The notes under the pieces: generated by a model
The model's database searches: none
What the model was told of the DNA's origin: nothing
Seen by the model: the letters and a program-made list of their open reading frames with translations, nothing else
Shown here: piece after piece, positions 5,291-25,291 of the stretch
Numbering within the stretch: the first letter of the stretch is position 1
Layout of the letters: the number at the start of each line of letters is the position of its first letter
IMG/VR virus record: IMGVR_UViG_3300042922_000542
Coordinates: 1 to 64,000 of that record
DNA: 64,000 nucleotides
Reading direction: 5' to 3' (one strand)
Made by a program: the position numbers and the translations under genes

Positions 5291-5360
5291 TAAAGGAACC
5301 TCCTTTATAAATATACTTTAATAAATACTTAAAAATTAGTAAAAGGGAGATGCAATAGTT

Positions 5361-9107: not shown

Positions 9108-9114
9108 ACTAATT

Positions 9115-9154
9115 AATATTATAGATAGATCCAAATGGATCTATCTATAATATT
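9115..9154. terminator. Intrinsic terminator hairpin
   Basis: AATATTATAGATAGATCCA-AA-TGGATCTATCTATAATATT followed by a T run, just after the fibre stop. Confidence 0.8.
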
Positions 9155-9219
9155 TTTATGTTTGTATATTATAACATAACATTATATGAAGCAATATTAT
9201 ATAAGGCGGTATTATAGAT

Positions 9220-10104: not shown

Positions 10105-10190
10105 TGTAATTTAGGTACCAATTCAAACATATCTGTTAATACATAAAATTTATAAATGTTAAAAAATATAAAATTGAGGAGATAGATAAT

Positions 10191-11180
10191 ATGGCTATAA
10201 TCGGATATACTGAAAACACTGACTTGACTTCTTTCAATGAATCAACTCTTTCAAAGAGTGAAACATTTAAATTATTTCAAGCCATCGGCGACCCAATAGA
10301 AAAAGCAAAAAACCTCATCAAAAATGCACGGGTTTTAACAAATGAAGATATTGAAACAGCGTATATTCAAGTTAAACAATATTCAAATTCATTAAGTAGA
10401 TCTGCTGTTAAAGCATACGATACCGGTTCCGTAGTTCTTTTATACACCGAGTTACCGTCACTTAGAATGAGTCAAGCATTTCCATTTATTACATTTAGGC
10501 ATAAAGATAAATATATCACATATATATTTATCGATAAATATATATCTAAAAGAAAAGATGGTGGATTGGATTTAAGCCCTGCGGTGTTACATGATTTATT
10601 AATAGGCGGAGTTATCGCCAATAAATTAAAAACTAATTATGATTCATTAGCAAGTAATCAATACCTACAAAAAATGTTAATGGAAATTTACACAAAATTC
10701 GTTACCCGTATTATTAATAAAGAATATGGAATCGGTGCAGATAAACAAATATCTGATTCAGCGCAATATTTTATAAATAGATTTTTCCTGGAAAAGATAT
10801 TTGAAACTAATGATGTGCCAGAAAACATTGAACGTCTTAGTATAAATAAATTAAAATATTTAGATGAAATGCTCATAAATGAAATAAAAATTAAATATGA
10901 AACTGCAAACCCATCATCATTTAGTGAATTATTGGAATTAGTTAAATCATTAAGTGTGAGGATGAATTCATTAACATTAAAATTATTTACAGATAAATGG
11001 ATTAATTATTATTACGCACCTGCAACATTAGCAATTGACAACATGGAATATTTAATATTCATGATAATTGCATTACTGCATGGAAATAATACGATTATAT
11101 CAATTAAAGCATCTGAAATAGTTAAGGAAACAAAAGGTATTAAAATGTTACAAGAAGAAATGCTGAAATTAATAAATTAA
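10191..11180 (+). CDS. Hypothetical protein
   Basis: 329 aa ORF with GAGGAG RBS. Confidence 0.7.
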   Translation: MAIIGYTENTDLTSFNESTLSKSETFKLFQAIGDPIEKAKNLIKNARVLTNEDIETAYIQVKQYSNSLSRSAVKAYDTGSVVLLYTELPSLRMSQAFPFITFRHKDKYITYIFIDKYISKRKDGGLDLSPAVLHDLLIGGVIANKLKTNYDSLASNQYLQKMLMEIYTKFVTRIINKEYGIGADKQISDSAQYFINRFFLEKIFETNDVPENIERLSINKLKYLDEMLINEIKIKYETANPSSFSELLELVKSLSVRMNSLTLKLFTDKWINYYYAPATLAIDNMEYLIFMIIALLHGNNTIISIKASEIVKETKGIKMLQEEMLKLIN

Positions 11181-11243
11181 ATTTATATACTTATAGGAAC
11201 TATTAGATTAATTCAATAATAATATAAAAGGAGTGTTCAAACT

Positions 11244-11546
11244 ATGGCAGCAATTATAAAAAATGTAGTAATCGATGAATTTGAAATACCTGAGGAGTTA
11301 GCCAAAGAACTTAGCTCATTATTAACAGAATCTTCTATTAAGAAAGCATTGCTTGTGGAATTAGTTGAAGTGCCGGCTAAATATGATATCATTGAAAATG
11401 CAGTAATTATACTTGAAGATAAAATAACTGCATTAAAGAATATGATCACTAGAGAATATGTTCCAAATCATTACAGATCTTCTGAATATTCTTGGAACTA
11501 TGATGGTTATGCCACTGCAGGTCGCATTGTTCAAATTATGAAATAA
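11244..11546 (+). CDS. Small accessory protein resembling CXXX-repeat peptide modification system protein (TIGR04116-like)
   Basis: 100 aa; helical N-part, then 'REYVPNHYRSSEYSWNYDG..IVQI'; converges on the Cys-rich/rSAM cassette; resemblance judged by eye. Confidence 0.5.
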   Translation: MAAIIKNVVIDEFEIPEELAKELSSLLTESSIKKALLVELVEVPAKYDIIENAVIILEDKITALKNMITREYVPNHYRSSEYSWNYDGYATAGRIVQIMK

Positions 11547-11557
11547 CATATACTAAA

Positions 11558-11589
11558 AATAATGGGGGACAATCAAGTCCCCCATTATT
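11558..11589. terminator. Bidirectional terminator
   Basis: AATAATGGGGGAC-AATCAA-GTCCCCCATTATT between convergent genes. Confidence 0.85.
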
Positions 11590-11607
11590 ATTTATTTTTT
11601 TATTTTA

Positions 11608-11901
11608 TTAGCAATTGCATCCACGACTAGTACAAGAGCAGCCATCATTATCTTCAACTAATATCATTCCGCAGTTATTGACAAACGAAATATACAAATC
11701 CGATTTTTTATCAGATGTAGACGAAACGTAGCCCTTACTTAATTCTTGTCTTAATACACTTAGACGAGTTGTTATATCAACCCATTCATTCGTGAATGAT
11801 TCATGCACGCCAACAAATTGTTCAACCGCATTAGCACGCCCAATCAATTCTAGTGGCAATACATTTGTATCAATTAATTCATATTGAACTTTCTTAACCA
11901 T
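11608..11901 (-). CDS. Small accessory protein (TIGR04116-like) with Cys-rich tail
   Basis: 97 aa; 'EW..ITTRLSVLRQELSKGY...LYISFVNNCGMIL' and tail GCSCTSRGCNC; last gene of the cassette. Confidence 0.55.
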   Translation of the reverse strand: MVKKVQYELIDTNVLPLELIGRANAVEQFVGVHESFTNEWVDITTRLSVLRQELSKGYVSSTSDKKSDLYISFVNNCGMILVEDNDGCSCTSRGCNC

Positions 11902-11915
11902 TATATTTCTCCTGA

Positions 11916-13181
11916 TTAATAATTTATTTTTCTGAATGATCTCTGTTGATCTTCTCGATTCATAGGTTGAGGATATCCAATTGTAGTCGGTTCTGTATGA
12001 TATGATTTCTCTGAAATATCTGCAGATGTATTAGATTGTAAATACGTTGTACAATGTCCTACGCATGTACTAATGCATTTATCAGTACAATTATTAAAAC
12101 AATCTCTATTACAACTTGAGTCACACCACCAACCACATAAATTGGCACAATTAGAACAAGTACCCTGACATTTAACTGAGCATAAACCAATACACATACC
12201 CACACATGAGTAGCAAAGATCACTACAACCACCACATGAGTCAGTGCAATTATCATAACAATGATTCACACATTTATTTACGCATGTTTGAGTACAATAA
12301 ATATTACATGCTTGGCCACATTGAACCGAACATTGACTTGAACAAGGTCCACAATTAAATCCACAATTGTTAGCGCATGTTCTACATAATGATGAACATG
12401 CATTTGAACATAGTGCTGTACATGATTTACCAACACAATTAACACTACATGTATTTACACATGCACCCTTACTTGCACCGCATGATGAACGACAAGCTTC
12501 TAGATGACAACTCGTGTTACAATCCTTTTGACATAGACCGGTACACGAACCACCGCAATTTCCACATCCCGTTGATCCAGGCGGTTTAGCATCCTCTTGG
12601 GATGATGCATGACCATCACATGTTGTACATATACCAGTGTTTGCATTACAATCACTTGCACAATTTGTACAACCGCCACCACCAGAACTAGTAGTTGCAC
12701 ATTCTTCTCTACACGATGTTCCACATCCTGTGCATGCACCACTACAACCACTACAACCATCTCCAGTACTAGTGCCGCTACATCCTCCACCACAGGTACC
12801 ACCGCATCCACCTTCACATCCATTTCCACAACTAGAGCTACACATAGAACAGTCACCTGAACAACTTCCAGGGCAACTAGTATCTCCAGGATCTGGTGCA
12901 GCAGATGACGATCCTTTACAAGTACCAGTACAACCACTACACCCTCCACTGCATCCATTAGAACATGATCCGGACCCAGCATTACAAGTATCTCTACACA
13001 TACCTTTACATGTTGTACCACAACTATCAGAACTACAACCTGCACCGCATCTAGATTGACAAGATGTTCCACAACTACCACATCCAGTACCAATACTCTT
13101 TGTTGCTGTGGTACTACTAGAACTACTAGCAGCATCTTTTGCTTGTTTTATAGCACCTATTATTCCTGACAATAAACTCAT
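11916..13181 (-). CDS. CxxxC-repeat Cys-rich protein, putative radical SAM substrate
   Basis: 421 aa, about 78 Cys (hand count), mostly spaced CxxxC/CxxC; RBS AAGGTGAT. Confidence 0.85.
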   Translation of the reverse strand: MSLLSGIIGAIKQAKDAASSSSSTTATKSIGTGCGSCGTSCQSRCGAGCSSDSCGTTCKGMCRDTCNAGSGSCSNGCSGGCSGCTGTCKGSSSAAPDPGDTSCPGSCSGDCSMCSSSCGNGCEGGCGGTCGGGCSGTSTGDGCSGCSGACTGCGTSCREECATTSSGGGGCTNCASDCNANTGICTTCDGHASSQEDAKPPGSTGCGNCGGSCTGLCQKDCNTSCHLEACRSSCGASKGACVNTCSVNCVGKSCTALCSNACSSLCRTCANNCGFNCGPCSSQCSVQCGQACNIYCTQTCVNKCVNHCYDNCTDSCGGCSDLCYSCVGMCIGLCSVKCQGTCSNCANLCGWWCDSSCNRDCFNNCTDKCISTCVGHCTTYLQSNTSADISEKSYHTEPTTIGYPQPMNREDQQRSFRKINY

Positions 13182-13214
13182 TTATCAATCACCTTCTTTA
13201 CACAATGATCTGTA

Positions 13215-14852
13215 TCAAACACGTATACCCGTATTTGCATTACAATCTATTTTACATGTAGCTGTACAAGCACTAGTACAACCAAAACACGTTCCAGTAC
13301 ATGTTAAATTACATGATCCAGTACAACCATCACAAGCTGTACACCCATTTGAACATCCAGTGTCACAGTTACCACAATTATTACTGCAGGTTACAGTACA
13401 ATTATCGTAGCAACTATTTTTACAAGTACTGAAACATGACAATGTACATACACCCTCACATACACCAGCACAATCACCTGTACAATCTGCAACACAACCC
13501 TCTTTACACGATTGACCCTTTCCAGATTTATAACCACCATTATGTTCATTATCATTACTAATGCATCCACCAAAACAACTAGTTGAACAATATGTATTAC
13601 AAGTTGTAAAACATAATGCTGAGCATACTGAATCCCAACATGTCGTTTTTTTATTAGGATAATATTGACATGAGAATGAACATCCACTGCATGTATACGT
13701 TGATGATATTACTGTATTTTGGATAACTGCACTTGAGGCTGTCTGTCCACAATTATTACTACATCCGCTAGGGTTACCTGTAGATTTAATAGAAACTGTA
13801 TCAGCTCCTGCATTCAAACAAGATTTACCACCAATATCACTACATTTGGTTTTACATCCAGAATAACATTGTGTCGTACATCCTGTACATATATTACCAC
13901 AATCTGAATGACATGCATTACCGCATCTGCTCCAACATGTGGATGCACAACCTTCGGAACATTGATTATCACATGTTAGATAACATAAACCTGTACATGC
14001 TACATTACACAATCCTTTAGATCCTGTTGAAATTTGTCTTGATGGATATTCTGATCCTCTATTAGGGTTTCTAGGATTAGCTCCAAATCTAGATGCTGAA
14101 CTAATGCCACCTGTCACTTGATCAACTACTGTTTCATTTCGTTGATCGTCCTGAGTAATTATATGACGATGAACAATCGGTGAAACATATGGGTTTATCG
14201 GATGATGATCAATAACACCAGGACTTGCTCCATAATCATCATAGAAGTTAGTCTCATCAGGACCACTATGACCTGGTAATATTTCTTCACCATCATATTC
14301 TCCAGATGGATATTCTACTGGAACTGTTACGGTTTTACCATTATTTGCAATAGGGTATAAACCATATCCTGTATACATACCATTCGTAACTCCATTATTA
14401 GGGTCATATTTCTGAAAAGATTCAGTAACGGGCACATTTAAAATATCATTTTCAGCAGCTTCTATTTTTGTTGATATATCTTCAGGATCTCTAAACACTA
14501 AACCCGCAACCTCATCTCTGCCATAGAATAAATCTATGTCATGGATCTTAGATAAACCAACTAAATAGTTTTGTATTTCATCAACATCAATTCTAGCACT
14601 AGATGAATTAATATCTCCAACAGGATTATCTCCTTGCGCAGGATATTTGATATTTCTTGTAGGTTCTATGGATCCGGTAGATGGAGTATTAATGGTATAT
14701 GTTTTATCTGTGACTTCACTAGTCCTATCAGCTCCGACTGCAGGTGTAGTTAACGGATCCCACCATTTAAATGTTCCACGACGTTTAATCTCAGCATTTA
14801 ATTTATCCTTAATTGCATCAAATTCTGTTTTTGAATATAATTTATCATTCAC
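13215..14852 (-). CDS. Protein with Cys-free N-half and CxxxC-repeat C-half, putative radical SAM substrate
   Basis: About 545 aa from GTG 14852 (RBS GAGGTG); about 52 Cys, all in the C-half starting at GLCNVACTGLC. Confidence 0.85.
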   Translation of the reverse strand: MNDKLYSKTEFDAIKDKLNAEIKRRGTFKWWDPLTTPAVGADRTSEVTDKTYTINTPSTGSIEPTRNIKYPAQGDNPVGDINSSSARIDVDEIQNYLVGLSKIHDIDLFYGRDEVAGLVFRDPEDISTKIEAAENDILNVPVTESFQKYDPNNGVTNGMYTGYGLYPIANNGKTVTVPVEYPSGEYDGEEILPGHSGPDETNFYDDYGASPGVIDHHPINPYVSPIVHRHIITQDDQRNETVVDQVTGGISSASRFGANPRNPNRGSEYPSRQISTGSKGLCNVACTGLCYLTCDNQCSEGCASTCWSRCGNACHSDCGNICTGCTTQCYSGCKTKCSDIGGKSCLNAGADTVSIKSTGNPSGCSNNCGQTASSAVIQNTVISSTYTCSGCSFSCQYYPNKKTTCWDSVCSALCFTTCNTYCSTSCFGGCISNDNEHNGGYKSGKGQSCKEGCVADCTGDCAGVCEGVCTLSCFSTCKNSCYDNCTVTCSNNCGNCDTGCSNGCTACDGCTGSCNLTCTGTCFGCTSACTATCKIDCNANTGIRV

Positions 14853-14915
14853 ACTTATCACCTCAATCACATTTATATTTGCATTTATTTAATTTTAAAG
14901 AGTCTGCAAATTCAA

Positions 14916-16727
14916 TTATTGGTTTTCCAATACGGTAATTGTAGAACGAGCCACTATCATTTTTAATAATTTTAACTCTTCCTCATTAATAACCATCAAT
15001 GCCCATTCGTCGGGTAATTGTAATTTTCTTACTCCCAAATTATAATGTGGTTTCTTTATAGCTAACAGGTTCCAGTAATATACATTGGCTAAGTGTTCGG
15101 CAAACATTTGTAAACATATGAATTGAGTTCTCTTATTTGCAGTCCCATATGTTTGATGGCATAACCCACTACACCAAGAGCAAGAAGATCCAATTGGACA
15201 ATCATAACAAATATCATTTGATTGTGAACGCCTTGTTACACTATCCATCATCGACAATATTTCGGATCCTTCTTCTCTACCAACCATACCAGTATCAATA
15301 TGACCTATACATTGCTCTTTGCATTTCGTTCCAAGTGATGATGGCATATATCTAATACATGGATAAAATTTACCCTTGTAGTCTAGTGCCAACATTGATC
15401 CTAATCCTCCACACCAATTTTGATCCGAAGTGTGTTTAAGCCTAGTCTCAGGTTTATCATCGAATATAGCAATATATAGATGCTCTAAATTATTTTCCAG
15501 CAAGTAGTTCGCTAGTTTCTTTAATTGTTCATATTCTAGTGTAGCAGTTTCTTGTGTCCAAACATCTTCAAACACGCAGTTTAAATTGATAGATTCCATA
15601 TCCTCATTGATGAAATTAATAACTGAATCATATAAATATTTCATATTTTCTGGAGCCAATGTCATCTTTGAATTTCTTTCGGTAGTATGATATTTATTAA
15701 AATGATTTAATGCAAGAATATCGATATCATACGAGCCTTCACCATTAGGCTGGATTCTACATGAGTCTTGTAATTCTTTATTACCATCTATTGATATATT
15801 AAATGAAACATGTTTAGCATATTTTTTAAAGAAATCTTGCACGTCTCTATCAAAATATAACATCCCATTGGTACATATAGAAATTCTATGCATTGCAAAC
15901 CATGGATGGTTTAATTCATAGCATCTTTCTAAAAAATATTCATAAATCTTTTTGGTAAGATTAATTTCTAACAATGGGTCCCCACCAATAAACTCAATGA
16001 TTATTGCAGGTGAATTGTGTTTATTAATATAACTATATTCATCATTTAAAAGTTTATCGATAAATGCTTTAGCTGTTGGAAATTTCATTCTTCCACATGT
16101 TTTATTTATCTGATAACAATATGTGCAGGATAAATTACAATCCTCAGTTGTTTGGAATGTAAAGTTGTGTACATATATTGATGTATCCTTATTAGTAGGA
16201 TCTACTGTATCTTGAGTAAACAATTCAGGGTAAACTTTTTGAATGGCATCACTATAACTTTCAACATTAAATCTAAAAAATTGATTTGGCATTATATTAA
16301 ATACTTCATCATCCTTTATTTTATCATCAATATAATTTAAACAATTTTCATCATCAGATAATATTATTACATCAAATCCAATCTCTTGATTTTTGAAATC
16401 AATATGTTTAACAATTACCTCAGATATATTATCAATATTATATGAGGAAACTCCAGATGATTCGATTATATCATTTAAGAATACTGCAACTATTTCACAG
16501 AATCCATAACGTACCTCGTCCAAGATACTAGTAAGTTTTTCATGTAATTCCGGGATTTTATCTAGATCCTTATTATGGTCATACATATAATTTATTCTAA
16601 ATGATATCGCATCAGCTTCATATCGTAACCTGGTTGTTTTATGATACCCGAATGTCTGCATTTCAAATATATCGAATTGCTGATTGTATAATTTAATTTT
16701 TTTATATAATGCATTTGTCTCTTTCAT
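14916..16727 (-). CDS. Radical SAM/SPASM peptide maturase, CXXX-repeat target family (TIGR04115-like), with N-terminal extension
   Basis: CxxxCxxC (TEDCNLSCTYCYQ), IEFIGGDPLL, SIDG; SPASM (NWCGG..FYPCIRY..CYDCPIGSSCSWCSG..FIC); C-terminal LANVYYWN signature. Confidence 0.9.
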   Translation of the reverse strand: MKETNALYKKIKLYNQQFDIFEMQTFGYHKTTRLRYEADAISFRINYMYDHNKDLDKIPELHEKLTSILDEVRYGFCEIVAVFLNDIIESSGVSSYNIDNISEVIVKHIDFKNQEIGFDVIILSDDENCLNYIDDKIKDDEVFNIMPNQFFRFNVESYSDAIQKVYPELFTQDTVDPTNKDTSIYVHNFTFQTTEDCNLSCTYCYQINKTCGRMKFPTAKAFIDKLLNDEYSYINKHNSPAIIIEFIGGDPLLEINLTKKIYEYFLERCYELNHPWFAMHRISICTNGMLYFDRDVQDFFKKYAKHVSFNISIDGNKELQDSCRIQPNGEGSYDIDILALNHFNKYHTTERNSKMTLAPENMKYLYDSVINFINEDMESINLNCVFEDVWTQETATLEYEQLKKLANYLLENNLEHLYIAIFDDKPETRLKHTSDQNWCGGLGSMLALDYKGKFYPCIRYMPSSLGTKCKEQCIGHIDTGMVGREEGSEILSMMDSVTRRSQSNDICYDCPIGSSCSWCSGLCHQTYGTANKRTQFICLQMFAEHLANVYYWNLLAIKKPHYNLGVRKLQLPDEWALMVINEEELKLLKMIVARSTITVLENQ

Positions 16728-16794
16728 TATAATACCTCCTGTTATATATTAACTTTATTTAGCTTAATTCTTAGTAATATTAAAATCATATAAA

Positions 16795-16824
16795 GATAAT
16801 GGATGGGCAATCCCATCCATTATC
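16795..16824. terminator. Terminator hairpin between the two rSAM cassettes
   Basis: GATAATGGATGGG-CAAT-CCCATCCATTATC. Confidence 0.8.
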
Positions 16825-16825
16825 A

Positions 16826-17662
16826 CTATCTATTATTTGATATGTATTCTTGATATATCATGGATAGTTCTTGATCAACTTTATTCCGCTCAGTTAATTT
16901 TGTATCATCATATTTTTGCTCGGATAACAATTGACCATTACAGTCCTTCGTTGAAATTACATAATGTGAATTGACATTAACGGTATTAATATTCTCAATA
17001 GTGATTTCATTATCGATAAAATAATTATCATAGATTAATTGTTTCATAATACTCATATAATGATCTCTAATAATATTGAAATCATCACTGACAAATCCAA
17101 ATTCAATTCGTTTAAATCCAATAGAAACTAAATTATTGATACTTTCTTTAAGATATCCAATATTAGATTTATTTAAAGTACAATGTGCAATTAGGTTAAT
17201 CCCACTCTTTATGAATTTGCCTATATTGTCTATTATATAATCATATGATCCTTTCCCGTTTTTAAGTATACGATTAATATTGTGCGATAATTTATTACCA
17301 TCTATTGAAATACATAATAAAATATTATATTTTTTAATGGTATTAATAATTTCATCTGAATACATCATACCGTTAGTTGAAGTTACAAATTTAAATTTAT
17401 ATTCAGAATAATGATCAATAATATATTTACATATTTGATTTAGTCGATCTATAAATAAAAATGGTTCACCGCCTAATAATTCAACAGTAATCGACCTACC
17501 CGTAATATGCAACATACTTTCATCGAATATCCGAATTATATCATCTATGGTACTATCTGATTCAATATCACTATCAAGCATATTATTATATACATAACAA
17601 TATTTACATCTCATATTGCAGAGCTTAGTAATATACATATTTATATGTCGACATTCAGACAT
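16826..17662 (-). CDS. Radical SAM protein lacking a SPASM domain
   Basis: TKLCNMRCKYCYV, LLGGEPFL, TNG, ISIDG; no C-terminal Cys cluster; ATG overlaps upstream TAA. Confidence 0.85.
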   Translation of the reverse strand: MSECRHINMYITKLCNMRCKYCYVYNNMLDSDIESDSTIDDIIRIFDESMLHITGRSITVELLGGEPFLFIDRLNQICKYIIDHYSEYKFKFVTSTNGMMYSDEIINTIKKYNILLCISIDGNKLSHNINRILKNGKGSYDYIIDNIGKFIKSGINLIAHCTLNKSNIGYLKESINNLVSIGFKRIEFGFVSDDFNIIRDHYMSIMKQLIYDNYFIDNEITIENINTVNVNSHYVISTKDCNGQLLSEQKYDDTKLTERNKVDQELSMIYQEYISNNR

Positions 17663-18783
17663 TAATCATCATCCTTCAAATTAAATTTAATACGAATATT
17701 GTCATATCCAATTTTATTAATAAACATTTCAGATGCATCATAAAAAAGTTTTATTGCTTTACATACACCATCTATGGGTTCACATATATTTTTCTTACCA
17801 TGTTCCATTATTGCTGCAAAACATTGACCATAGCATACGCCATATAATTCACAATTTCTACATTTTGGAGATATATCATGTGAAAAGTTTTTATATATAT
17901 TTGCAATATTATTGGTTTCATCAATATCAGTAAATATGGAACCAAGTTTAGTATGTTCAAAGCGGTTATTGAAAAAACGTTGACAAGGATATATGTCACC
18001 ATTGGGTGCTAATGCAATTGTAGATGAACCAGCTGAACAGAAGTAGGTTCTACCGTGGGCTTTACATCTATATGGTAATAGTAAGCCAGTATCAAGAAAT
18101 GGAGTTTCCGAGTAAAATTTATCAACTAGAAATTCTACATATTCAATATAAAAATTCTTTAATCTCTCCAATTGCACATCATTCCAATCGCAATCTCGGA
18201 CAATACTCAAATTAATACGCCTGAATCCATCTTTGATGTAATCTTTAATACCATCTAGGACATAATCAATATTATCAGGTGATATCATAAATTTAAATAT
18301 TTTAGAGCTGATTGGTCTGTTATTAGCTTCACAATATAGTGTAGCACCTTTTATACAGTCATCATAGCTACCTTTACCATTTGGATATACCCGACATCTA
18401 TCATGGCTGCTTCTCCCACCATCTAGGGACATACTAATCCCTATTTCATTATTCTTGAGATATTCAACCTTCTCTTTATTTAATAATGTCAAATTACTTG
18501 TAGTCATAATTGCAATATTTACATCTGGTCGCATTTTTTTTACTTCATTGATATTATCAACTATTTTACAGAATTTTTCCCATTCCATTATAGCCTCTCC
18601 ACCGAATAAATCAATATGAAGAGATTTTATATCATTTTTAACGATAATATTATTAAGAAATACGGGCAAATATTCAATAACATCATCCGATATTGTTAAC
18701 CCGTTTGTTTTATTAACATAGCAATATTTACAACGCAAATTGCATTTCTCAGTTACAATAATAATGATTGTACTAATTTTCAT
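17662..18783 (-). CDS. Radical SAM/SPASM maturase
   Basis: TEKCNLRCKYCYV, FGGE, SLDG; SPASM CSAG..GDIYPCQRF..CRNCELYGVCYGQC..VC. Confidence 0.92.
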   Translation of the reverse strand: MKISTIIIIVTEKCNLRCKYCYVNKTNGLTISDDVIEYLPVFLNNIIVKNDIKSLHIDLFGGEAIMEWEKFCKIVDNINEVKKMRPDVNIAIMTTSNLTLLNKEKVEYLKNNEIGISMSLDGGRSSHDRCRVYPNGKGSYDDCIKGATLYCEANNRPISSKIFKFMISPDNIDYVLDGIKDYIKDGFRRINLSIVRDCDWNDVQLERLKNFYIEYVEFLVDKFYSETPFLDTGLLLPYRCKAHGRTYFCSAGSSTIALAPNGDIYPCQRFFNNRFEHTKLGSIFTDIDETNNIANIYKNFSHDISPKCRNCELYGVCYGQCFAAIMEHGKKNICEPIDGVCKAIKLFYDASEMFINKIGYDNIRIKFNLKDDD

Positions 18784-18794
18784 TTTTTATACCT

Positions 18795-19208
18795 CTAATT
18801 ATCACCTATTACCAAACCACATTGATCACAATCACATGCACATCTATCACAATTGCAAGAACATCTATCGCAATCACAATCACAATTATCGCAATTACAT
18901 TGACATGTATTATTGTATATTGTCGTAGCAGCTATACTGGCATTATTAAAAACTGTAGCAAGTATATATTTGCCTTGTTCAAAATTTATCAATGAACTAA
19001 GATCTGCCTTGGGATATACCGCTGAATGACCATTTGCAGCAACTAAATTATTTTTAATTGATGTAAACAAAGTGCTAGTTATTAAATTACCTTTCACGGC
19101 TCTTTCTGTATTTGCAGGTTGACCAAGTCGTATTCGAGTTTGATCAACCGATGCAGCAACAACATTTGCATCATCCGCTAACATTTTCTGACCTTTAACT
19201 ATTGCCAA
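18795..19208 (-). CDS. Small protein with C-terminal (CxCxCDx)4 repeat, putative rSAM substrate
   Basis: Likely TTG start 19208 after GGGTGA; tail CQCNCDN-CDCDCDR-CSCNCDR-CACDCDQ-C. Confidence 0.85.
   Translation of the reverse strand: MAIVKGQKMLADDANVVAASVDQTRIRLGQPANTERAVKGNLITSTLFTSIKNNLVAANGHSAVYPKADLSSLINFEQGKYILATVFNNASIAATTIYNNTCQCNCDNCDCDCDRCSCNCDRCACDCDQCGLVIGDN
18829..18905 (-). repeat. Imperfect 21-bp tandem repeat encoding CxCxCDx heptads
   Basis: Four 7-codon units visible in both DNA and protein. Confidence 0.75.
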
Positions 19209-19518
19209 TGTTATCACCCACTTTTACAATAAAATCAATAGACTCATATAAAATATCACTGATTGAGAAGTGATATATATTCTTTACAATATTACTTATA
19301 GATTTAACGATGGTACCATTTACCAATACCTGAACTGATTTTACTGGTTTATCCCTAAAATATTGATTTAAAACTGTACCTGTTGTTGGAACAACATCAT
19401 TTATGATACGTAATTGAGTTAATTCACTCCCAACATTCATAAAAAAATTTATCCCCGCAGTTTTATCAATTATAACATCTTCATCAATATATTCAATTTT
19501 TATTTTTACACCTTCCAT
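19195..19518 (-). CDS. Small beta-rich hypothetical protein in rSAM cassette
   Basis: 107 aa, RBS AGGAGG; resembles the neighbouring ORF. Confidence 0.7.
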   Translation of the reverse strand: MEGVKIKIEYIDEDVIIDKTAGINFFMNVGSELTQLRIINDVVPTTGTVLNQYFRDKPVKSVQVLVNGTIVKSISNIVKNIYHFSISDILYESIDFIVKVGDNIGNS

Positions 19519-19549
19519 AATTTAACCCTCCTGTTTATAATAATTAATC

Positions 19550-19951
19550 TTATTCATAATTAAAATGGAGTTCGGAATTAGATAAATATATTCGATCTAT
19601 TATTATATCATCCATAATATTTATACCATATGAGATACTCTTTACGCCTAATATTTCATCACATATTTCATCTCCATTAAACATTTGAACATTGATTACT
19701 TTTCGATCCATCAATGCTTGACGAATTATATCAAATTTTTCATGAAAGTCGTTAACTGTGACATTTCTAATGATTAATGCATTTGATATCATTTTGCTTA
19801 AACTATTTGCCACTGTGAGACTATCATCTCGGTATCGTACGGCCGATACTACCGGGGATTGAGGTAGGGATGTTGGATCTATATTAATATTAGGCACCAC
19901 ATCTAATGTCATCGTCACCATTGGTTCGATTATTATTTTTACACGTGTCAT
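19550..19951 (-). CDS. Small beta-rich hypothetical protein in rSAM cassette
   Basis: Likely start MTRVK at 19951 (RBS AAGGGG); overlaps the 3' end of the upstream rSAM gene. Confidence 0.65.
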   Translation of the reverse strand: MTRVKIIIEPMVTMTLDVVPNINIDPTSLPQSPVVSAVRYRDDSLTVANSLSKMISNALIIRNVTVNDFHEKFDIIRQALMDRKVINVQMFNGDEICDEILGVKSISYGINIMDDIIIDRIYLSNSELHFNYE

Positions 19952-21224
19952 TGCATGAACACCCCTTTTCATTTATCATACGAGAAACTTTTTCTGTTAT
20001 TAATAATTCATGTAATTCTAATAAATGTTGTAGCGTTATTATTTGACCTTCCGTAAAATTATCAGTTAGAAGTCTACCCATTTCTTGCAAAACTGTAATT
20101 GAGACTTCGTGATCTCTATGAATTTTACCAAATAGTCGTTCATATACATAAATCGATAATTCCATTTCAACCTCTAATAATTTACAATACTTAGGAAAAC
20201 CATATGCGATATTTCCATTTTCTATATAATTAATAGCCATACAGCTCTTGCAGTTATAATTCTTACATTCAGAACATGCCTTGTATCCAGTCATATATTT
20301 TTTATACATCTCTTCATATGGTGCACATTTTAATGTATTTATACCATTAAATACATCACCAATTATAGTATCTGGGTCATTCATGAATGCATGGCATGGA
20401 TATATATAACCATCTGGAGCTACAGTGCAAAATGATACACCCGCACCGCATGTTTTATCGGCATGTCGCTCTTTATATACCATTGATGAAAATTGTTTAT
20501 AATTCCCTCCACTATTTTCACAATCCTCAATGATTGCATTGGCAATATGGGTATATTGCTCTCTAAATATAACATAATCATTTTCATCCCAATTCTCTTC
20601 ATGAAGAGGCATAAACCATATCTTATCAAATCTTAAGATATTTTTAAAGAAGATGTATGACTCATGTGCATATGGTAATGTTGCTTTGGTTATAACACTA
20701 TGCACTGATAATTTATTAGATGGAATGTCTAATTTATCAAATAATGCTCTAAGTTTTTTTATCGTCTCTATTATATTATGAGATGAACCATTACCCGCAT
20801 GATCAATTCTTTGCAGATCATTAATCCTAGGAATTGAATCAAATGATAATTGAATTGAAAAACTTTCAGGATTATTTACCCACCAATTGGTTAGAAATTG
20901 TTCGTATTCATTATTGTATAATACACCATTTGTTATCAATTCACTATTATATTTCAAACCATGTTTTTTACATTGATCCATAGCATAATTGAATATGTGG
21001 TTCATAGTATTTATATTGAGTGTAGGCTCCCCTCCAAAATATGACACACTAATACTTGTTTTATTATTAACTAAAGCATCATGGATAAGTAAATCAATTG
21101 TTTTTTCACCAATCTCATTACTCATAAATTTACCCTTTGATGAATTATTTTTTTCAAAACAATATTTACAATTAAGATTACATGTGTCTGTTAATAGTAT
21201 CGATGCACTCGTAAATGATGACAT
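19890..21224 (-). CDS. Radical SAM/SPASM maturase
   Basis: TDTCNLNCKYCFE, YFGGEP, ITNG; SPASM CGAG..GYIYPCHAF..CSECKNYNCKSC..YC. Confidence 0.92.
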   Translation of the reverse strand: MSSFTSASILLTDTCNLNCKYCFEKNNSSKGKFMSNEIGEKTIDLLIHDALVNNKTSISVSYFGGEPTLNINTMNHIFNYAMDQCKKHGLKYNSELITNGVLYNNEYEQFLTNWWVNNPESFSIQLSFDSIPRINDLQRIDHAGNGSSHNIIETIKKLRALFDKLDIPSNKLSVHSVITKATLPYAHESYIFFKNILRFDKIWFMPLHEENWDENDYVIFREQYTHIANAIIEDCENSGGNYKQFSSMVYKERHADKTCGAGVSFCTVAPDGYIYPCHAFMNDPDTIIGDVFNGINTLKCAPYEEMYKKYMTGYKACSECKNYNCKSCMAINYIENGNIAYGFPKYCKLLEVEMELSIYVYERLFGKIHRDHEVSITVLQEMGRLLTDNFTEGQIITLQHLLELHELLITEKVSRMINEKGCSCNDTCKNNNRTNGDDDIRCGA

Positions 21225-21285
21225 TTATTACGCCTCCTGATAATTATAGAAATTAATATTGTATGTTGTTTAAGATTCCTATATT

Positions 21286-21320
21286 TAAATAGTTAATCCG
21301 ATTGTCGGATTAACTATTTA
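21286..21320. terminator. Hairpin at end of tail-fibre gene
   Basis: TAAATAGTTAATCCGA-TTG-TCGGATTAACTATTTA. Confidence 0.7.
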
Positions 21321-23634
21321 AAATTAATATTTTTACTCTTTGAATATCTTCCGTATCTTTATTCTCTAATGCCTTACCTATTATAGATCCTGGAATACTT
21401 GATACTGAACTTTTTCCAACGCCTTTGATAGACGATGTTGTTATTAAATCTCCAGCTTTAACCTTGCCGGTAATATATGCAGATACTCTTCCTGTTAATC
21501 CTATAGGTATATTTCTTTCTAAGTTTTCCTCAGTGGTATATCCTTCTTCCAAACCTAATAAATATCCATATGTATCAGATACTACACCAACAACCAATGT
21601 CGAATATTCACCAGTGCTTTTTCGATAATTACCAGTTTCTGGATTTAATTCTATAATATCGCCAGGTTTAAAATCTTCAGACATATCATCCTTTTTAAAT
21701 AACTCGGCAACGTCACCCCATACTGCATTCTGAACTAAAGAGCCTGTTATGGTACCGGTAACTGTTAAATTACCAGTGATCGTTCCGCCAGTGAGTGGTA
21801 AATATGGATGGGTGTGTCCATTATCAGATTTATTATTCCATGCTGCTATTTGAGCATCTGTTACAAATCTATTAGTAGTATTTTGAGTTATAATCGATGC
21901 TGGGTGGCTCGCAGGATGTTGATATGAATATGGAGCGAGTTTAGATGCCAAAGCTTGTAGTTGTTCCACCGTGGATCTACTACTAATAGAATCGATTATA
22001 GTTGCAAATGATACATCAGTTGGTGCTGCAGCAGCACTAGTCATATTTCCTTTAATAGAAAATGCAGGTATATCTGCTAATTTTATATTCGTTACAGCTT
22101 TATCTCGTATTTTTGTAGTTAATATAGATAAATCTGCAATATTATAATCAGTTACAGCATTCATTTGAATTTTATGATTATTTACACAACCCTCACCCAA
22201 TTCATCGGAAGTTATAGTAAATGCAGCAATCTTTATACCAGTAACAGCCCTATCTGCAATAGCTGGCGTTTTAACGGACCCTTGCAATATATGATAATCG
22301 CGTATTGCATTACCAGCTATCTTTGAAGCAATGATCGTCCCATCTAATAAGTGATTATACATTACATTATTATCAGCTATATGTTCGGCAAGAATTGCAC
22401 CTGCTTTAATATCAACACTGTCCGCAACGGCTTTGTATGCTAAGTTTTGTAATCCTGTAACGTGTATTTCATCAACTACCGTACTGACATCACCATTTAT
22501 CATGTATGATATAGAACCATTATTTGAACCAGATCCTATCTCTATAGATTGTATAAATCTGCCATCAGCTTCAGCTTTACTGTATACATCTGTAGCCTGT
22601 GGTAGTGCTGCCACATTTATTGATAGACCGTTAGGTGTTTCAGAAAAATAAGTTGCATCATATTTTGATATTGTGAAATCCTGTATATCCCACCAATAAT
22701 TATCACCATCATGTTTACATGCAGCAATTGCACTATAATTAGAATTTTCTTTATTTTTAATCAGATATATATGTCTTTGTAATAATGGCGATGCCATCGG
22801 TAAATCTGAAACTTTATTTACAATATCAATAAATTCAACGTAGTCAGTTAAATCAGGTCCAACTATGGTATCAACATATGATGTCACGAAGTCAACTACT
22901 GCTTTAGATGATGGATATTTAACATCATCATAGTTTGTAGTATGTGATATAGTCACTGATTTGTTAGCAATATTTTCTTTAGCTGCAAATAATGGTCCAT
23001 GTGAAAATGGATTTGTCAAATGTGTTGTATAATCATTTAATAAATTAACCATTCTGGCATCTAGTAAATCAATACTATCGTTTAATTCAGTTTGTACATT
23101 AGATAATGCATTACGTATATCACTATGTGCTGTATTGCTAGTATCATGAATACCAATAATATTATTAATTGTATTTGAAACACTACCATCCGAATCTAAT
23201 TGATCTATTGTAACGTTGTGAGGATTATTAAAATTTGCAAGATGTGCGGTTAATGATGATAGGTCTATATTAAAATTATAATTTTCTAATATCGACATTA
23301 CTGCATTTCTCTGATTATATGATAATGGCTTCTCCAAATCAGATGTATTGTTAACCCGACCGAGTCCTATATCTTCAGATGTAATATTAATATCGCCGTA
23401 CATCCCATTTACAGATGTTACTGGGAATGTAATATATCCAATACCACCTTCTTTTATTTCTTCACGTATATCATCTAGTATTTGACGTAATGTTATTTCG
23501 TTCGCATCCTGTTGGTCATATATAGCATCTAATACACTTCTAGGCCAAATTATATCGGCCATACTAGTACTCGGATTATTCTCATCATCAAATACAATTT
23601 GATCGCGGATAACTTTATTCCTAATATTATTCAT
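21310..23634 (-). CDS. Tail fibre protein with C-terminal intramolecular-chaperone (peptidase G2-like) domain
   Basis: PVTSVNG..G, GLGRVNNTSDLEKP, NPHNVT, 10-aa IxxxAVTxxK repeats, HPASHPAS, HTHPYLPLTGGTITG; C-terminal DVAELF..PGD..VVGVVSD..GRV..GDL..IIGKALE; start ATG 23634 with AGGAGG. Confidence 0.85.
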   Translation of the reverse strand: MNNIRNKVIRDQIVFDDENNPSTSMADIIWPRSVLDAIYDQQDANEITLRQILDDIREEIKEGGIGYITFPVTSVNGMYGDINITSEDIGLGRVNNTSDLEKPLSYNQRNAVMSILENYNFNIDLSSLTAHLANFNNPHNVTIDQLDSDGSVSNTINNIIGIHDTSNTAHSDIRNALSNVQTELNDSIDLLDARMVNLLNDYTTHLTNPFSHGPLFAAKENIANKSVTISHTTNYDDVKYPSSKAVVDFVTSYVDTIVGPDLTDYVEFIDIVNKVSDLPMASPLLQRHIYLIKNKENSNYSAIAACKHDGDNYWWDIQDFTISKYDATYFSETPNGLSINVAALPQATDVYSKAEADGRFIQSIEIGSGSNNGSISYMINGDVSTVVDEIHVTGLQNLAYKAVADSVDIKAGAILAEHIADNNVMYNHLLDGTIIASKIAGNAIRDYHILQGSVKTPAIADRAVTGIKIAAFTITSDELGEGCVNNHKIQMNAVTDYNIADLSILTTKIRDKAVTNIKLADIPAFSIKGNMTSAAAAPTDVSFATIIDSISSRSTVEQLQALASKLAPYSYQHPASHPASIITQNTTNRFVTDAQIAAWNNKSDNGHTHPYLPLTGGTITGNLTVTGTITGSLVQNAVWGDVAELFKKDDMSEDFKPGDIIELNPETGNYRKSTGEYSTLVVGVVSDTYGYLLGLEEGYTTEENLERNIPIGLTGRVSAYITGKVKAGDLITTSSIKGVGKSSVSSIPGSIIGKALENKDTEDIQRVKILILNS

Positions 23635-23807
23635 TGTTATCATCCTCCTATATGTCATAAAATATAATTATTACTCTAATTTATATTAAACAAATGGTTT
23701 GAGTGCTGATGAAGAAAAGCAAAAAAATGAATTATTTAGATTATATATTATTCTATAAATATACCATAAAATCATATGGTATAATAAATAAAATGGAGGC
23801 ATCGCAG

Positions 23808-25263: not shown

Positions 25264-25291
25264 AATTATCTCCTTATATATTTATTAATTA

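What the first reader, a model, noticed from the sequence alone, without database searches (positions are those of the whole stretch)
11244..21224. Phage-encoded multi-radical-SAM system with giant Cys-repeat substrates, adjoining a tail-fibre gene
Seen: four rSAM genes (603, 278, 373 and 444 aa), three Cys-repeat proteins and four small accessory ORFs lie directly downstream of a tail-fibre gene. No transporter, leader peptidase or immunity gene is visible. Established: rSAM/SPASM enzymes install Cys thioether cross-links in sactipeptides and ranthipeptides, and bacterial CXXX-repeat systems (TIGR04114/04115/04116 families) pair such a maturase with short Cys-repeat targets. Inference: the phage has repurposed RiPP chemistry to modify large proteins that are probably virion-associated, for example a thioether-stapled fibre tip or a metal-loaded appendage. 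This is the best candidate for the undescribed system.
Basis: partly seen in the sequence, partly recalled or inferred. Interest (0 to 1): 0.95.

Follow-up and report, generated by a model that had tools for sequence, protein, structure and literature searches.

The report
Phage radical-SAM cassettes for Cys-repeat fibre proteins
A 246-kb jumbo phage carries two gene cassettes, with four radical-SAM enzymes in all, that most likely cross-link very cysteine-rich phage proteins; comparison with hundreds of other phages places such proteins at or on tail fibres, a kind of virion chemistry nobody has yet tested.

Summary
On the minus strand of 11244-21224 lie four intact radical-SAM (rSAM) genes, three Cys-repeat proteins and four small ORFs, just downstream of a tail-fibre-like gene. 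It is two cassettes separated by terminator-like hairpins.

Module A (rs603, Cys proteins of 551 and 421 aa, a 97-aa ORF, convergent 100-aa helper) is a phage form of the catalogued but uncharacterised CXXX-repeat system (TIGR04114/04115/04116; Pfam PF27846). In related jumbo phages the two Cys proteins are one ~890-aa protein next to the fibre gene.

Module B (rSAMs of 444, 373 and 278 aa, two small ORFs, a 129/140-aa protein ending in four CxC[N/D]CDx heptads) recurs as the same six genes in another jumbo-phage contig, behind three fibre paralogues.

At least 461 viral contigs and many Clostridia prophages hold such rSAM/target pairs at the end of tail gene blocks. Two contigs have canonical tail-fibre proteins ending in a CXXX repeat. 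In SPN3US the targets are mis-annotated and follow tail protein gp168.

Best reading: rSAM/SPASM enzymes staple Cys-repeat stretches, probably by thioethers, in tail-fibre-associated proteins. Chemistry and virion location are inferred. This is a new variant of a known kind.

The parts
21310..23658 (-). tf782: tail-fibre-like protein with a C-terminal IMC-type (self-cleaving chaperone) domain. Upstream neighbour and context, not part of the cassettes.
   Evidence: phrog_892 tail fiber 1.8e-13 and other tail PHROGs. Weak Peptidase_G2 IMC hit. N-terminal 460 aa is 35-37% identical to the gene directly upstream of the rs603 homologue in related jumbo phages. C-terminal 160 aa is 40-50% identical to fibre paralogues next to rSAM cassettes elsewhere.
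21284..21322 (.). Terminator-like hairpin (18-bp stem) between the fibre gene and module B.
19890..21224 (-). rs444: rSAM/SPASM maturase, first gene of module B.
   Evidence: PapB family 7e-54 (183 bits, cut-off 340), SCIFF maturase 2.6e-41, TIGR04115 1.2e-36. Closest solved structure is 5WGG at 4.2e-25. 65% identical homologue in L182.
19550..19972 (-). a140: small accessory ORF of module B. Probably starts at 19912, giving 120 aa.
   Evidence: No family hit. The public gene call is 120 aa. 35% identical homologue at the same position in L182.
19195..19518 (-). a107: small accessory ORF of module B.
   Evidence: No family hit. 56% identical homologue at the same position in L182. Only a weak Ig-like lead from the Atlas.
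18795..19217 (-). cys140: target of module B. A three-helix N-domain followed by four heptads CxC[N/D]CDx. Probably starts at 19184, giving 129 aa.
   Evidence: Sequence. Heptads and family alignment. 26 relatives at E<=1e-3. AF2 N-domain pLDDT about 90, three helices. N-domain homologous to that of CXXX targets, hhalign 95.8%, E 7.7e-9.
17662..18783 (-). rs373: rSAM/SPASM maturase of module B.
   Evidence: PapB family 6.8e-54, TIGR04115 7.5e-35, SPASM Pfam 1.4e-5. 68% identical homologue in L182.
16826..17662 (-). rs278: short rSAM without SPASM domain. Last gene of module B; its start overlaps the stop of rs373.
   Evidence: Radical_SAM 3.7e-16 and no SPASM hit. PapB 2.1e-34, TIGR04115 3.2e-31, HxsB 1.9e-27. 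59% identical homologue in L182.
16795..16824 (.). Terminator-like hairpin (13-bp stem, read on both strands) between module B and module A.
14916..16727 (-). rs603: CXXX-repeat-family rSAM/SPASM maturase with a 185-aa N-terminal extension.
   Evidence: TIGR04115 9.7e-103, 344.4 bits (cut-off 350), profile 3-359 of 359; 346.5 bits. 5WGG 6.9e-15. 2638 relatives, many with inteins.
13215..14870 (-). cys551: target, first part. A 287-aa N-domain followed by 52 Cys, mostly every fourth residue.
   Evidence: Family of 121 proteins carrying PF27846. Equals the first ~550 residues of the ~890-aa protein of relatives.
11916..13181 (-). cys421: target, second part. 78 Cys, mostly every fourth residue.
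   Evidence: Aligns to residues ~320-750 of the ~890-aa relatives.
11608..11901 (-). s97: small ORF ending in CSCTSRGCNC. Role unknown; possibly a further small target.
   Evidence: No family hit. No detectable similarity to the C-terminal domain or the 92-aa neighbour of relatives.
11558..11589 (.). Bidirectional terminator-like hairpin between s97 and the convergent helper gene.
11244..11546 (+). p100: probable helper, a distant relative of the ~100-aa protein that lies between target and rSAM in small phages (TIGR04116-like).
   Evidence: hmmsearch best hit in the window. hhalign 67%, E 5e-5 over 74 columns. Alignment A4. Conserved beside the module in five related jumbo loci. No direct TIGR04116 hit.

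Best explanation
The region holds two independent phage cassettes. Each pairs radical-SAM maturases with their own Cys-repeat protein substrates.

Module A:
- rs603, a CXXX-repeat-family rSAM/SPASM enzyme, acts on cys551 and cys421. These are a split version of one ~890-aa protein in relatives. s97 may be a further substrate.
- The small helical protein p100 probably helps.

Module B:
- rs444, rs373 and the SPASM-less rs278 act on cys140, whose tail is four CxC[N/D]CDx heptads.

Proposed course (inferred):
1. A conserved N-terminal helix of each substrate (consensus F/M-x-x-L-K-x-+-h-x-x-E-h-x-R-R, or I-x-A-x-D-x-N in module B) is the recognition element. It is never cut off, because no protease is encoded.
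2. The enzyme cleaves SAM. The 5'-deoxyadenosyl radical takes a hydrogen from a residue beside each Cys. The Cys sulfur, held on an auxiliary Fe-S cluster of the SPASM domain, closes a thioether.
3. Repeated along up to 130 Cys, this turns a Gly/Ser/Thr/Cys-rich stretch with no hydrophobic core into a ladder of small rings, stiff and resistant to proteases and reductants.
4. The product is a structural, tail-fibre-associated part of the virion (a shaft or tip), not a released peptide.

Shown: gene content, family relations, the Cys register and its conservation, and recurrent placement with tail genes. Inferred: that the enzymes act on these proteins, the thioether chemistry, and the virion location.
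For: Enzymes:
- rs603 matches TIGR04115 end to end at 344-346 bits, about 195 bits above the next family.
- rs444 and rs373 are closest to the thioether-forming PapB family. All four have the SAM-cluster motif.
- The nearest solved structure is 5WGG, which from my own knowledge is the thioether-forming SCIFF maturase CteB.

Substrates:
- The Cys spacing is far from chance.
- In 61 relatives of 50-70% identity, about 90 Cys columns are invariant while the residues between them vary.
- The family carries PF27846 tSAM_targ_Cxxx_rpt.

Pairing:
- 69-73 of the 80 best viral loci and 59 of 80 genome loci have a Cys-repeat ORF within three genes of the rSAM.
- Module B recurs as the same six genes in L182.

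Tail link:
- In related jumbo phages the order is fibre-like gene, rs603 homologue, ~890-aa Cys protein.
- In small phages the pair closes the tape-measure/baseplate/fibre block. Every annotated PHROG among the top 25 hit by the two upstream genes of 26 loci is tail, baseplate, fibre, structural or head.
- SPN3US has two unannotated CXXX ORFs and two rSAMs just after gp167 (virion protein) and gp168, a tail protein like phiKZ gp131 at the baseplate periphery (PMC5105663).
- L208 and L203 encode canonical tail-fibre proteins (phrog_6722 2e-40; phrog_11011 2e-10) whose last 40-60 residues are a CXXX repeat, with an rSAM two genes downstream.
- IMC-type fibre genes directly adjoin 11 of 36 module-B-like loci.

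Other:
- The ~890-aa relatives have an N-domain, a Cys stretch and a C-terminal beta domain, the layout of a fibre.
- Phage targets have no signal peptide, and no export or protease gene is present.
- Many rs603 homologues carry inteins, which usually sit in conserved, important genes (the generalisation is my own knowledge).
Against: - No experiment or proteome places any of these proteins in a virion. The SPN3US targets were never annotated in the right frame, so published proteomes could not have found them.
- The chemistry of the TIGR04115 family is, to my knowledge, uncharacterised. Homology to thioether-formers is 22-26% identity at best.
- cys551, cys421 and cys140 themselves hit no tail PHROG. 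Fold searches with the N- and C-domains found nothing.
- Fibre/Cys-repeat fusions are only 2 of 86 targets examined.
- In five of the 80 listed loci (L025, L026, L028, L030, L032), from related jumbo phages, the rs603 homologue has no Cys ORF within 10 kb.
- In the loci fetched, the N-domain occurs only together with Cys repeats. That fits a pure recognition (leader-like) role as well as an anchoring role.
- AlphaFold gives the Cys stretch pLDDT 20-40, so nothing is known of its shape.
Confidence: 0.5

Rival explanations
1. The Cys arrays bind metal or iron-sulfur clusters: a metallothionein-like or cluster-carrying appendage, possibly still on the fibre. The rSAM enzymes prepare or load them rather than forming thioether ladders.
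For: 20-45% Cys in strict register, invariant across relatives. The cellular form in L019 has a twin-arginine signal and adjacent TatA/TatC genes, and Tat is the route for folded, often cofactor-bearing proteins (own knowledge). Phage fibres and tail tips are known to hold metal ions or an Fe-S cluster (T4 gp37, lambda gpL; own knowledge).
Against: Metal binding alone needs no rSAM, yet rSAM genes accompany the targets in 69-73 of 80 viral loci. The enzymes are nearest to peptide cross-linking maturases, not to known cluster-assembly proteins. Two to five rSAMs per cassette suggest several covalent steps.
Confidence: 0.15
2. The products are not virion parts. They are infection-time or lysis-released factors, for example a bacteriocin-like product against competitors, an anti-defence or superinfection-exclusion protein, or an assembly aid. 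They are encoded at the end of the late operon like many morons.
For: rSAM-matured repeat products usually act as free peptides. An rSAM pair maturing a repeat protein into a phage-host conflict effector is documented for the bacterial HXS defence system (PMC13128918). The short rSAM plus SPASM rSAM pairing of module B and of SPN3US gp163/gp164 resembles HxsB/HxsC. Ends of tail operons are common moron sites (own knowledge). The N-domain is found only with Cys repeats in the loci fetched.
Against: There is no signal peptide, protease, transporter or immunity gene. Targets are 165-1072 aa, not peptides. Two tail-fibre proteins carry the repeat as their own C-terminus. The module is conserved in position next to fibre genes in phage lineages as far apart as SPN3US, gut jumbo phages and small Clostridia prophages. 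PADLOC gives only generic viperin-type rSAM similarity.
Confidence: 0.15
3. The enzymes do act on the Cys-repeat proteins, but the chemistry differs: Cys oxidation to formylglycine as in anaerobic sulfatase maturases, epimerisation, C-C cross-links of the cyclophane type, or inter-chain links.
For: The same enzymes also hit the anaerobic sulfatase maturase, cyclophane-forming and other SPASM families at 1e-12 to 1e-26. Family scores for PapB are about half the cut-off. TIGR04115 chemistry is unknown to me, and no paper on it was found.
Against: The top-ranked characterised relatives (PapB, SCIFF/CteB, QhpD) all make Cys thioethers (their chemistry from my own knowledge). The only invariant feature of the substrates is Cys itself. 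Aromatic residues needed for cyclophanes are rare in the X positions.
Confidence: 0.2

Closest known systems
CXXX-repeat peptide modification system defined in silico (NCBIfam TIGR04114 target repeat, TIGR04115 rSAM, TIGR04116 associated protein, TIGR04119 second maturase; Pfam PF27846)
   Same: rs603 matches TIGR04115 over its whole length at 344-346 bits. cys551 and cys421 have Cys every fourth residue and their family carries PF27846. p100 is a distant relative of the small associated protein. The cellular forms seen in L019 and L163-L181 show the classic layout.
   Different: Targets here are 421-551 aa (~890 aa in relatives) with a large N-domain, against 59-190-aa peptides in cellular loci. 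There is no Tat/Sec signal, no ABC transporter and no TIGR04119 partner. rs603 has a 185-aa N-terminal extension. The helper is convergent, not in line. The setting is a phage tail-gene block. All curated cut-offs are narrowly or clearly missed.
Ranthipeptide / SCIFF thioether maturases (PapB with freyrasin; CteB, PDB 5WGG)
   Same: rs444 and rs373 score best on the PapB family (7e-54). rs444 matches 5WGG at 4.2e-25. The module B target is rich in Cys and Asp/Asn, the residue pair PapB links (own knowledge).
   Different: Scores are about half the PapB cut-off (183 against 340 bits). Three rSAMs serve one target, one of them without SPASM. The target keeps a folded 95-residue three-helix domain. 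No leader protease or exporter is present.
QhpD/QhpC of quinohemoprotein amine dehydrogenase: an rSAM/SPASM enzyme that puts Cys-to-Asp/Glu thioethers into a protein subunit (own knowledge)
   Same: It is a precedent for rSAM thioethers acting as structural staples in a protein that stays part of a larger assembly. TIGR03906 hits rs444 at 3.5e-33 and rs373 at 5.6e-29.
   Different: QhpC has three cross-links and is periplasmic. Here there are up to 130 Cys in regular register, in a phage, and scores are far below the cut-off.
HXS anti-phage system: HxsB/HxsC rSAM pair maturing the repeat protein HxsA (PMC13128918)
   Same: An rSAM pair (one SPASM, one short) plus a small protein matures a repeat-bearing protein rather than a peptide. 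rs278 hits HxsB at 1.9e-27 and SPN3US gp164 (ACQ60_gp102), the short rSAM, hits HxsC at 6e-12.
   Different: The repeats are His-x-Ser, not Cys. The effector is exported and cleaved. The system is bacterial and defensive. All scores here are below the cut-offs.
Covalently or metal-stapled virion proteins (HK97 capsid isopeptide chainmail; iron-binding His-x-His needle of the T4 gp37 fibre tip; own knowledge)
   Same: The functional idea is the same: a phage reinforces an exposed structural element by bonds beyond ordinary folding. The CXXX repeat sits at the C-terminal tip of the fibre proteins in L208 and L203, where gp37 has its needle.
   Different: Those staples are autocatalytic or metal-mediated and need no dedicated enzyme. 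Here dedicated Fe-S radical enzymes are encoded alongside. There is no sequence relation.

Membership tests
CXXX-repeat rSAM modification system (TIGR04114-04116, 04119) | rSAM/SPASM maturase reaching the TIGR04115 cut-off of 350 bits | tested here: inconclusive
   rs603 scores 344.4 bits and 346.5 bits over profile positions 3-359 of 359. That is 1-2% under the cut-off and about 195 bits above the next family. The phage relative in L006 scores 300.6 bits.
CXXX-repeat rSAM modification system (TIGR04114-04116, 04119) | Adjacent target with Cys every fourth residue (TIGR04114 cut-off 20 bits; PF27846) | tested here: met
   Spacing of 4 in 39 of 51 and 54 of 77 gaps, against 5.3 and 8.2 by chance. 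The cys551 family carries precomputed PF27846. The short TIGR04114 model itself gives only 14.2 bits in cys551, but 21.3 bits in the L006 phage target.
CXXX-repeat rSAM modification system (TIGR04114-04116, 04119) | Small associated protein TIGR04116 (cut-off 50 bits) | tested here: not met
   No hit in the whole genome at E<=10, and none for p100. Only remote similarity of p100 to the phage helper family (hhalign 67%, E 5e-5). Two members of alignment A4 (which pools p100, the phage helpers and the L019 91-aa ORF) hit TIGR04116, best 2.3e-30.
CXXX-repeat rSAM modification system (TIGR04114-04116, 04119) | Second maturase TIGR04119 (cut-off 150 bits) | tested here: not met
   Only rs444 hits it, at 61.5 bits over its SPASM region. 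rs444 belongs to the other cassette.
Radical SAM / SPASM superfamily | CX3CX2C SAM-cluster motif, plus a Cys-rich SPASM domain for auxiliary clusters | tested here: met
   The motif is present in all four. Radical_SAM and Fer4_12 Pfam hits in all four. SPASM passes in rs373 and is weak in rs444. The SPASM part of TIGR04115 is matched in rs603. rs278 lacks SPASM.
PapB-type ranthipeptide maturases (NF047865) | Score at or above 340 bits, with a short precursor carrying Cys-X3-Asp motifs | tested here: not met
   rs444 and rs373 score 183.3 bits each. The target is Cys/Asp-rich but in CxC[N/D]CDx heptads on a 129-aa protein.
RiPP in the strict sense (leader-guided, cleaved, exported peptide) | Leader peptidase and/or exporter present; small mature product | tested here: not met
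   No protease or transporter family in or beside the cluster. Targets are 129-551 aa.
Phage tail fibre or fibre-associated protein | Similarity of the Cys proteins themselves to tail-fibre families | tested here: not met
   cys551, cys421 and cys140 hit no PHROG. Fold searches were empty. Support is indirect: synteny and two fibre/CXXX fusions elsewhere.
Phage tail fibre or fibre-associated protein | Physical presence in purified virions | not testable with these tools
   No proteome covers these ORFs. In SPN3US and Erwinia phage records they are annotated in the wrong frame or strand.
Thioether (sactionine/ranthionine) cross-linked product | Loss of 2 Da per Cys and an S-C bond to a neighbouring residue | not testable with these tools
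   Inferred only from the nearest characterised enzyme families.

The most novel reading that the evidence does not exclude
Cys-repeat stretches matured by phage-encoded radical-SAM enzymes form a so far unrecognised kind of virion material: covalently laddered, core-less fibre shafts or tips. This kind is spread over at least 461 viral contigs, SPN3US-like and gut jumbo phages, and many Clostridia prophages. In multi-enzyme cassettes such as module B, each of the three rSAMs would install one of the three Cys registers of the heptad. That would be the first enzyme-installed radical cross-linking of a virus particle.
Probability: 0.35. Interest if true: 0.85.

Novelty: new variant of a known kind. 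Interest (0 to 1): 0.66.

Why it matters
If the Cys-repeat proteins are modified virion parts, phages use oxygen-sensitive radical enzymes to build their adsorption apparatus. That would add a new class of virion post-translational modification beside HK97-type chainmail.

It would give the uncharacterised TIGR04115 family a biological role and a tractable substrate. It would also explain a gene set that automatic annotation mislabels as RiPP clusters in prophage-rich Clostridia genomes.

It is directly testable in a cultured phage, SPN3US, whose targets have simply been missed by annotation. A polypeptide stapled at every fourth residue would interest protein engineers as well. If instead the products are not structural, the finding still marks a widespread, unstudied phage function.

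Tried and rejected
- **Near-identical or protein-level matches in cultured phages.** Megablast of the region found nothing. tblastn of cys551 and of a small-phage N-domain found nothing. A single-protein scan of viral contigs found nothing, so alignments were needed.
- **Structure.** AF2 of an ~890-aa relative gave pLDDT 20-40 for the Cys stretch. Foldseek against BFVD and VIA against PDB gave no match above noise for its N- or C-domain. Foldseek against PDB with the confident three-helix N-domain of cys140 gave nothing. Atlas shape hits to N-termini of phage Ig-like/fn3 proteins are only a lead, because three-helix bundles are common, and an HMM search of the fetched loci found the N-domain only in Cys proteins.
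- **Small ORFs.** a140, a107 and s97 have no family, no relation to each other, none to the C-terminal domain of the ~890-aa relatives and none to the small ORFs of L043 or L015.
- **rs603 N-terminal extension as a fused helper.** Inconclusive (hhalign 28%).
- **IMC-type fibre adjacency as a general rule.** Rejected. It holds for 11 of 36 module-B-like loci but only 1 of 57 module-A-like viral loci.
- **Defence-system reading.** PADLOC gives only generic viperin-type rSAM similarity. rs278 is nearer to peptide maturases than to viperins.
- **Literature.** Nine searches found no paper on phage CXXX or Cys-repeat rSAM systems.
- **'Tail fiber' PHROG tally among targets.** Most of these hits came from one protein, L208, so I count two fusion proteins, not a dozen.

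Full report
**1. What is there**

The window is the first 64 kb of a 246,147-bp viral record with direct terminal repeats, about 30% G+C. It encodes a phiKZ-type split RNA polymerase beta subunit, so it belongs to the phiKZ-like jumbo phages.

Between 11244 and 23658 the minus strand carries, in order of transcription:
- a 782-aa tail-fibre-like gene (tf782);
- rs444, a140, a107, cys140, rs373 and rs278;
- rs603, cys551, cys421 and s97.

The 100-aa ORF p100 converges on them from the plus strand.

All four rSAM genes have the CX3CX2C motif and hit Radical_SAM/Fer4_12. Three also have a SPASM region; rs278 does not. No transporter, protease or immunity family appears in or next to the cluster.

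cys551 and cys421 contain 52 and 78 Cys. Of the gaps between neighbouring Cys, 39 of 51 and 54 of 77 are exactly four residues. Shuffles of the same stretches give 5.3+-2.1 and 8.2+-2.7.

**2. Two cassettes, not one**

Terminator-like hairpins with 13-18-bp stems lie at three places:
- 21284-21322, after the fibre gene;
- 16795-16824, between rs278 and rs603;
- 11558-11589, between s97 and p100.

In related jumbo phages (L015, L017, L023, L024, L029) the homologue of tf782 is followed directly by the homologue of rs603 and then by the Cys protein. The six genes from rs444 to rs278 are therefore an insertion here.

The same six genes, in the same order, occur in another jumbo-phage contig (L182, 232 kb). 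Identities are 65, 35, 56, 56, 68 and 59%. There they lie behind three paralogous fibre genes that share tf782's C-terminal domain, and no module A follows them.

**3. Module A**

- rs603 matches the NCBIfam model for 'radical SAM peptide maturase, CXXX-repeat target family' (TIGR04115) over positions 3-359 of 359. It scores 344.4-346.5 bits, just under the curated cut-off of 350 and far above the next family, PapB at 148.7 bits.
- cys551 has 121 relatives, all carrying Pfam PF27846, which the Atlas names tSAM_targ_Cxxx_rpt.
- The usual relative is one protein of about 890 aa: an N-domain of about 300 residues, about 420 residues of Cys repeats, and a C-terminal beta-rich domain.
- Here, and in the closest relative (70% identity, 544 aa), the gene is split. 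cys551 covers the first part and cys421 the second. The C-terminal domain is absent or unrecognisable.
- In an alignment of 61 relatives that are 50-70% identical, about 90 Cys columns are invariant while the residues between them vary. Each Cys therefore matters.
- p100 is conserved beside the module in five related loci. It aligns end to end with the ~100-125-aa protein that sits between target and rSAM in small phages (hhalign 67%, E 5e-5).
- Alignment A4 pools p100, those helpers and the 91-aa ORF of the cellular locus L019. Two of its 23 members hit TIGR04116, best 2.3e-30. p100 itself does not hit TIGR04116.

**4. Module B**

- cys140 probably starts at Met12, since the public gene call is 129 aa.
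- It consists of a confidently predicted three-helix domain (pLDDT about 90) followed by four heptads CxC[N/D]CDx.
- Its N-domain is homologous to the N-domain of the CXXX targets of small phages (hhalign 95.8%, E 7.7e-9).
- The much larger N-domain of the cys551 family shares only the first helix with them (81%, E 1.2e-5 over 24 columns). That helix is the one element common to all targets, and is my candidate for the enzyme-recognition element.
- rs444 and rs373 are closest to the PapB ranthipeptide maturase family (7e-54) but reach only half its cut-off. rs278 is a short rSAM without SPASM.
- A short rSAM paired with a SPASM rSAM also occurs in SPN3US: gp164 (ACQ60_gp102) is the short rSAM and gp163 (ACQ60_gp103) the SPASM enzyme.
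- Other viral contigs carry cassettes of two to five rSAMs with Cys proteins of other registers.

**5. How common, and where**

- Of the best 80, 73 have a CXXX ORF in the locus. By a stricter count, 69 have it within three genes of the rSAM. Target length is 165-1072 aa, median 268.
- In five listed loci from related jumbo phages (L025, L026, L028, L030, L032) no Cys ORF lies within 10 kb of the rs603 homologue.
- The best of these are prophage-like regions of Clostridia (Oscillospiraceae, Lachnospiraceae, Faecalibacterium and others) with the same layout.
- The weakest genome loci show the cellular form: a 707-727-aa rSAM, Cys peptides of 59-190 aa, sometimes a twin-arginine-like signal, and large neighbouring genes that look like transporters by size only.
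- L019, filed as 'Bacteriophage sp.', is such a cellular locus. It holds a Tat-signal CXXX protein, the rSAM, a second SPASM protein, a 91-aa ORF (presumably the A4 member that scores 2.3e-30 on TIGR04116), TatA and TatC.

**6. The link to tails**

- In small phages the order is typically tape measure, baseplate or distal tail genes, target, helper, rSAM, followed by a strand switch or lysis-type genes.
- I scanned the two genes upstream of the pair in 26 diverse loci against PHROGs. Every annotated family among the 25 most often hit is tail, baseplate, tail fibre, structural or head.
- In SPN3US two CXXX ORFs of 130 and 134 aa lie between gp167 ('virion structural protein') and the rSAM genes. 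The records annotate a wrong-frame ORF there, and an Erwinia phage record annotates opposite-strand ORFs.
- The gene before gp167, gp168, is reported as a tail protein similar to phiKZ gp131, which sits at the baseplate periphery and may associate with fibres (PMC5105663).
- Two viral contigs (L208, L203) encode proteins with strong tail-fibre matches (phrog_6722 2.3e-40; phrog_11011 1.8e-10). Their last 40-60 residues are a CXXX repeat, and an rSAM lies two genes downstream.
- Fibre genes with tf782's C-terminal IMC-type domain directly adjoin 11 of 36 module-B-like loci, but only 1 of 57 module-A-like viral loci. That particular pairing is frequent, not general.

**7. Most likely mechanism**

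See the best explanation. In short, the enzymes recognise the N-terminal helix, possibly with the small helper, and convert the Cys repeats into a ladder of thioether rings. The product stays attached to its N-domain and is built into or onto a tail fibre.

The thioether step rests on the nearest characterised families (PapB, SCIFF/CteB, QhpD) and on my knowledge of their chemistry. The structural role rests on section 6. Neither is demonstrated.

A speculative detail: the heptad of cys140 has three Cys positions and the cassette has three rSAMs.

**8. Rivals**

- Metal or cluster binding. The Tat link of the cellular form favours it; the constant company of rSAMs argues against it.
- A non-structural, released or intracellular factor. 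The HXS system shows that rSAM-matured repeat proteins can be conflict effectors. Against it stand the missing export genes and the fibre fusions.
- A different radical chemistry.

**9. Comparison with the known, and novelty**

At family level this is the CXXX-repeat system that was defined in silico and is already in NCBIfam, Pfam and PHROGs (phrog_1802 for the enzymes; phrog_6085, 'unknown function', for 32 of 86 targets). NCBI already names a 58%-identical relative accordingly, on a 153-kb contig binned as Lachnospiraceae. I found no paper on its chemistry or on its phage form.

What I believe is new:
- phage targets are large proteins with a conserved N-domain;
- the genes sit at the end of tail modules, and in two cases the repeat sits on fibre proteins;
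- multi-rSAM cassettes such as module B exist;
- this genome combines two cassettes with 143 target Cys.

Hence 'new variant of a known kind'.

**10. Limits**

- Gene calling in the surveys is my own simple ORF picker.
- The scans returned only the best 80 loci each.
- PHROG names are annotations, not tests.
- The source run is labelled soil metagenome, and the host is unknown.

Noticed in passing
relatives of window 14916-16727 (P0162, P0170, P0181, P0196, P0248 and others): Many homologues of rs603 in related jumbo phages are 745-958 aa. They carry intein-type domains (Hint_2, Intein_splicing, LAGLIDADG_3, Hom_end_hint, PT-HINT) inserted in the rSAM gene. The window's own copy has none.
   Followed up: no
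L005 5130-5522 and 5533-5937 (SPN3US, NC_027402); L021 about 5030-6150 (Erwinia phage pEa_SNUABM_29): The CXXX-repeat ORFs of SPN3US-like phages are missing from the records. SPN3US gp166/gp100 is annotated in a wrong overlapping frame, and the Erwinia record annotates opposite-strand ORFs. Published proteomes therefore could not have detected these proteins.
   Followed up: partly
P0271, P0273, P0279 (relatives of window 18795-19217): Some relatives of cys140 continue, right after the Cys heptads, into a ~300-residue C-terminal domain. It begins with a Cys-(Phe/Val/Leu)-Leu-Pro motif and looks like a Hint/intein-type self-cleaving domain. It might cut itself off and leave an activated C-terminus.
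   Followed up: no
L019 (MT837480, filed as Bacteriophage sp.): This 6.8-kb record looks like a bacterial chromosome fragment. It holds a Tat-signal CXXX protein, a TIGR04115-type rSAM, a SPASM-only protein, a 91-aa ORF (probably the TIGR04116 hit), TatA and TatC. The cellular form of the system thus seems tied to Tat export.
   Followed up: partly
window 5361-9107 (+): A 1248-aa protein with a tail-fibre-like N-terminus (weak PHROG hits). It then has some two dozen repeats of the type YYS-x-DG-x-x-W, reminiscent of BNR/sialidase propeller blades. No Pfam hit.
   Followed up: no
window 11558-11589 and 16795-16824: The two 13-bp-stem hairpins that bound module A share the outer stem sequence ATAATGG...CCATTAT. 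They may be a phage-specific terminator type or a recombination scar of cassette insertion.
   Followed up: no
L183 about 7968-15517: A 136-kb viral contig carries five rSAM genes around two Cys proteins of 202 and 192 aa with CxCxC-type repeats. It is the largest such cassette seen.
   Followed up: no
P0172 (NCBI, 153,716-bp contig labelled MAG Lachnospiraceae bacterium): A 58%-identical rs603 homologue sits on a 153-kb contig binned as a Lachnospiraceae genome. This is probably a mis-binned jumbo phage, and possibly a hint to the host group of the clade.
   Followed up: no
window 57782-63949 (-), 46671-49601 (-), 24757-26080 (-): A 2055-aa ORF has no PHROG match. The window also holds a phiKZ-type RNA polymerase beta subunit with both halves fused in one 976-aa ORF, and adjacent dihydrofolate reductase and thymidylate synthase genes.
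   Followed up: partly
window 16826-17662 (-): rs278 covers nearly the whole prokaryotic viperin profile of PADLOC (71.5 bits, positions 2-225 of 257), although it scores higher on peptide-maturase families. A nucleotide-directed activity is unlikely but not excluded.
   Followed up: partly
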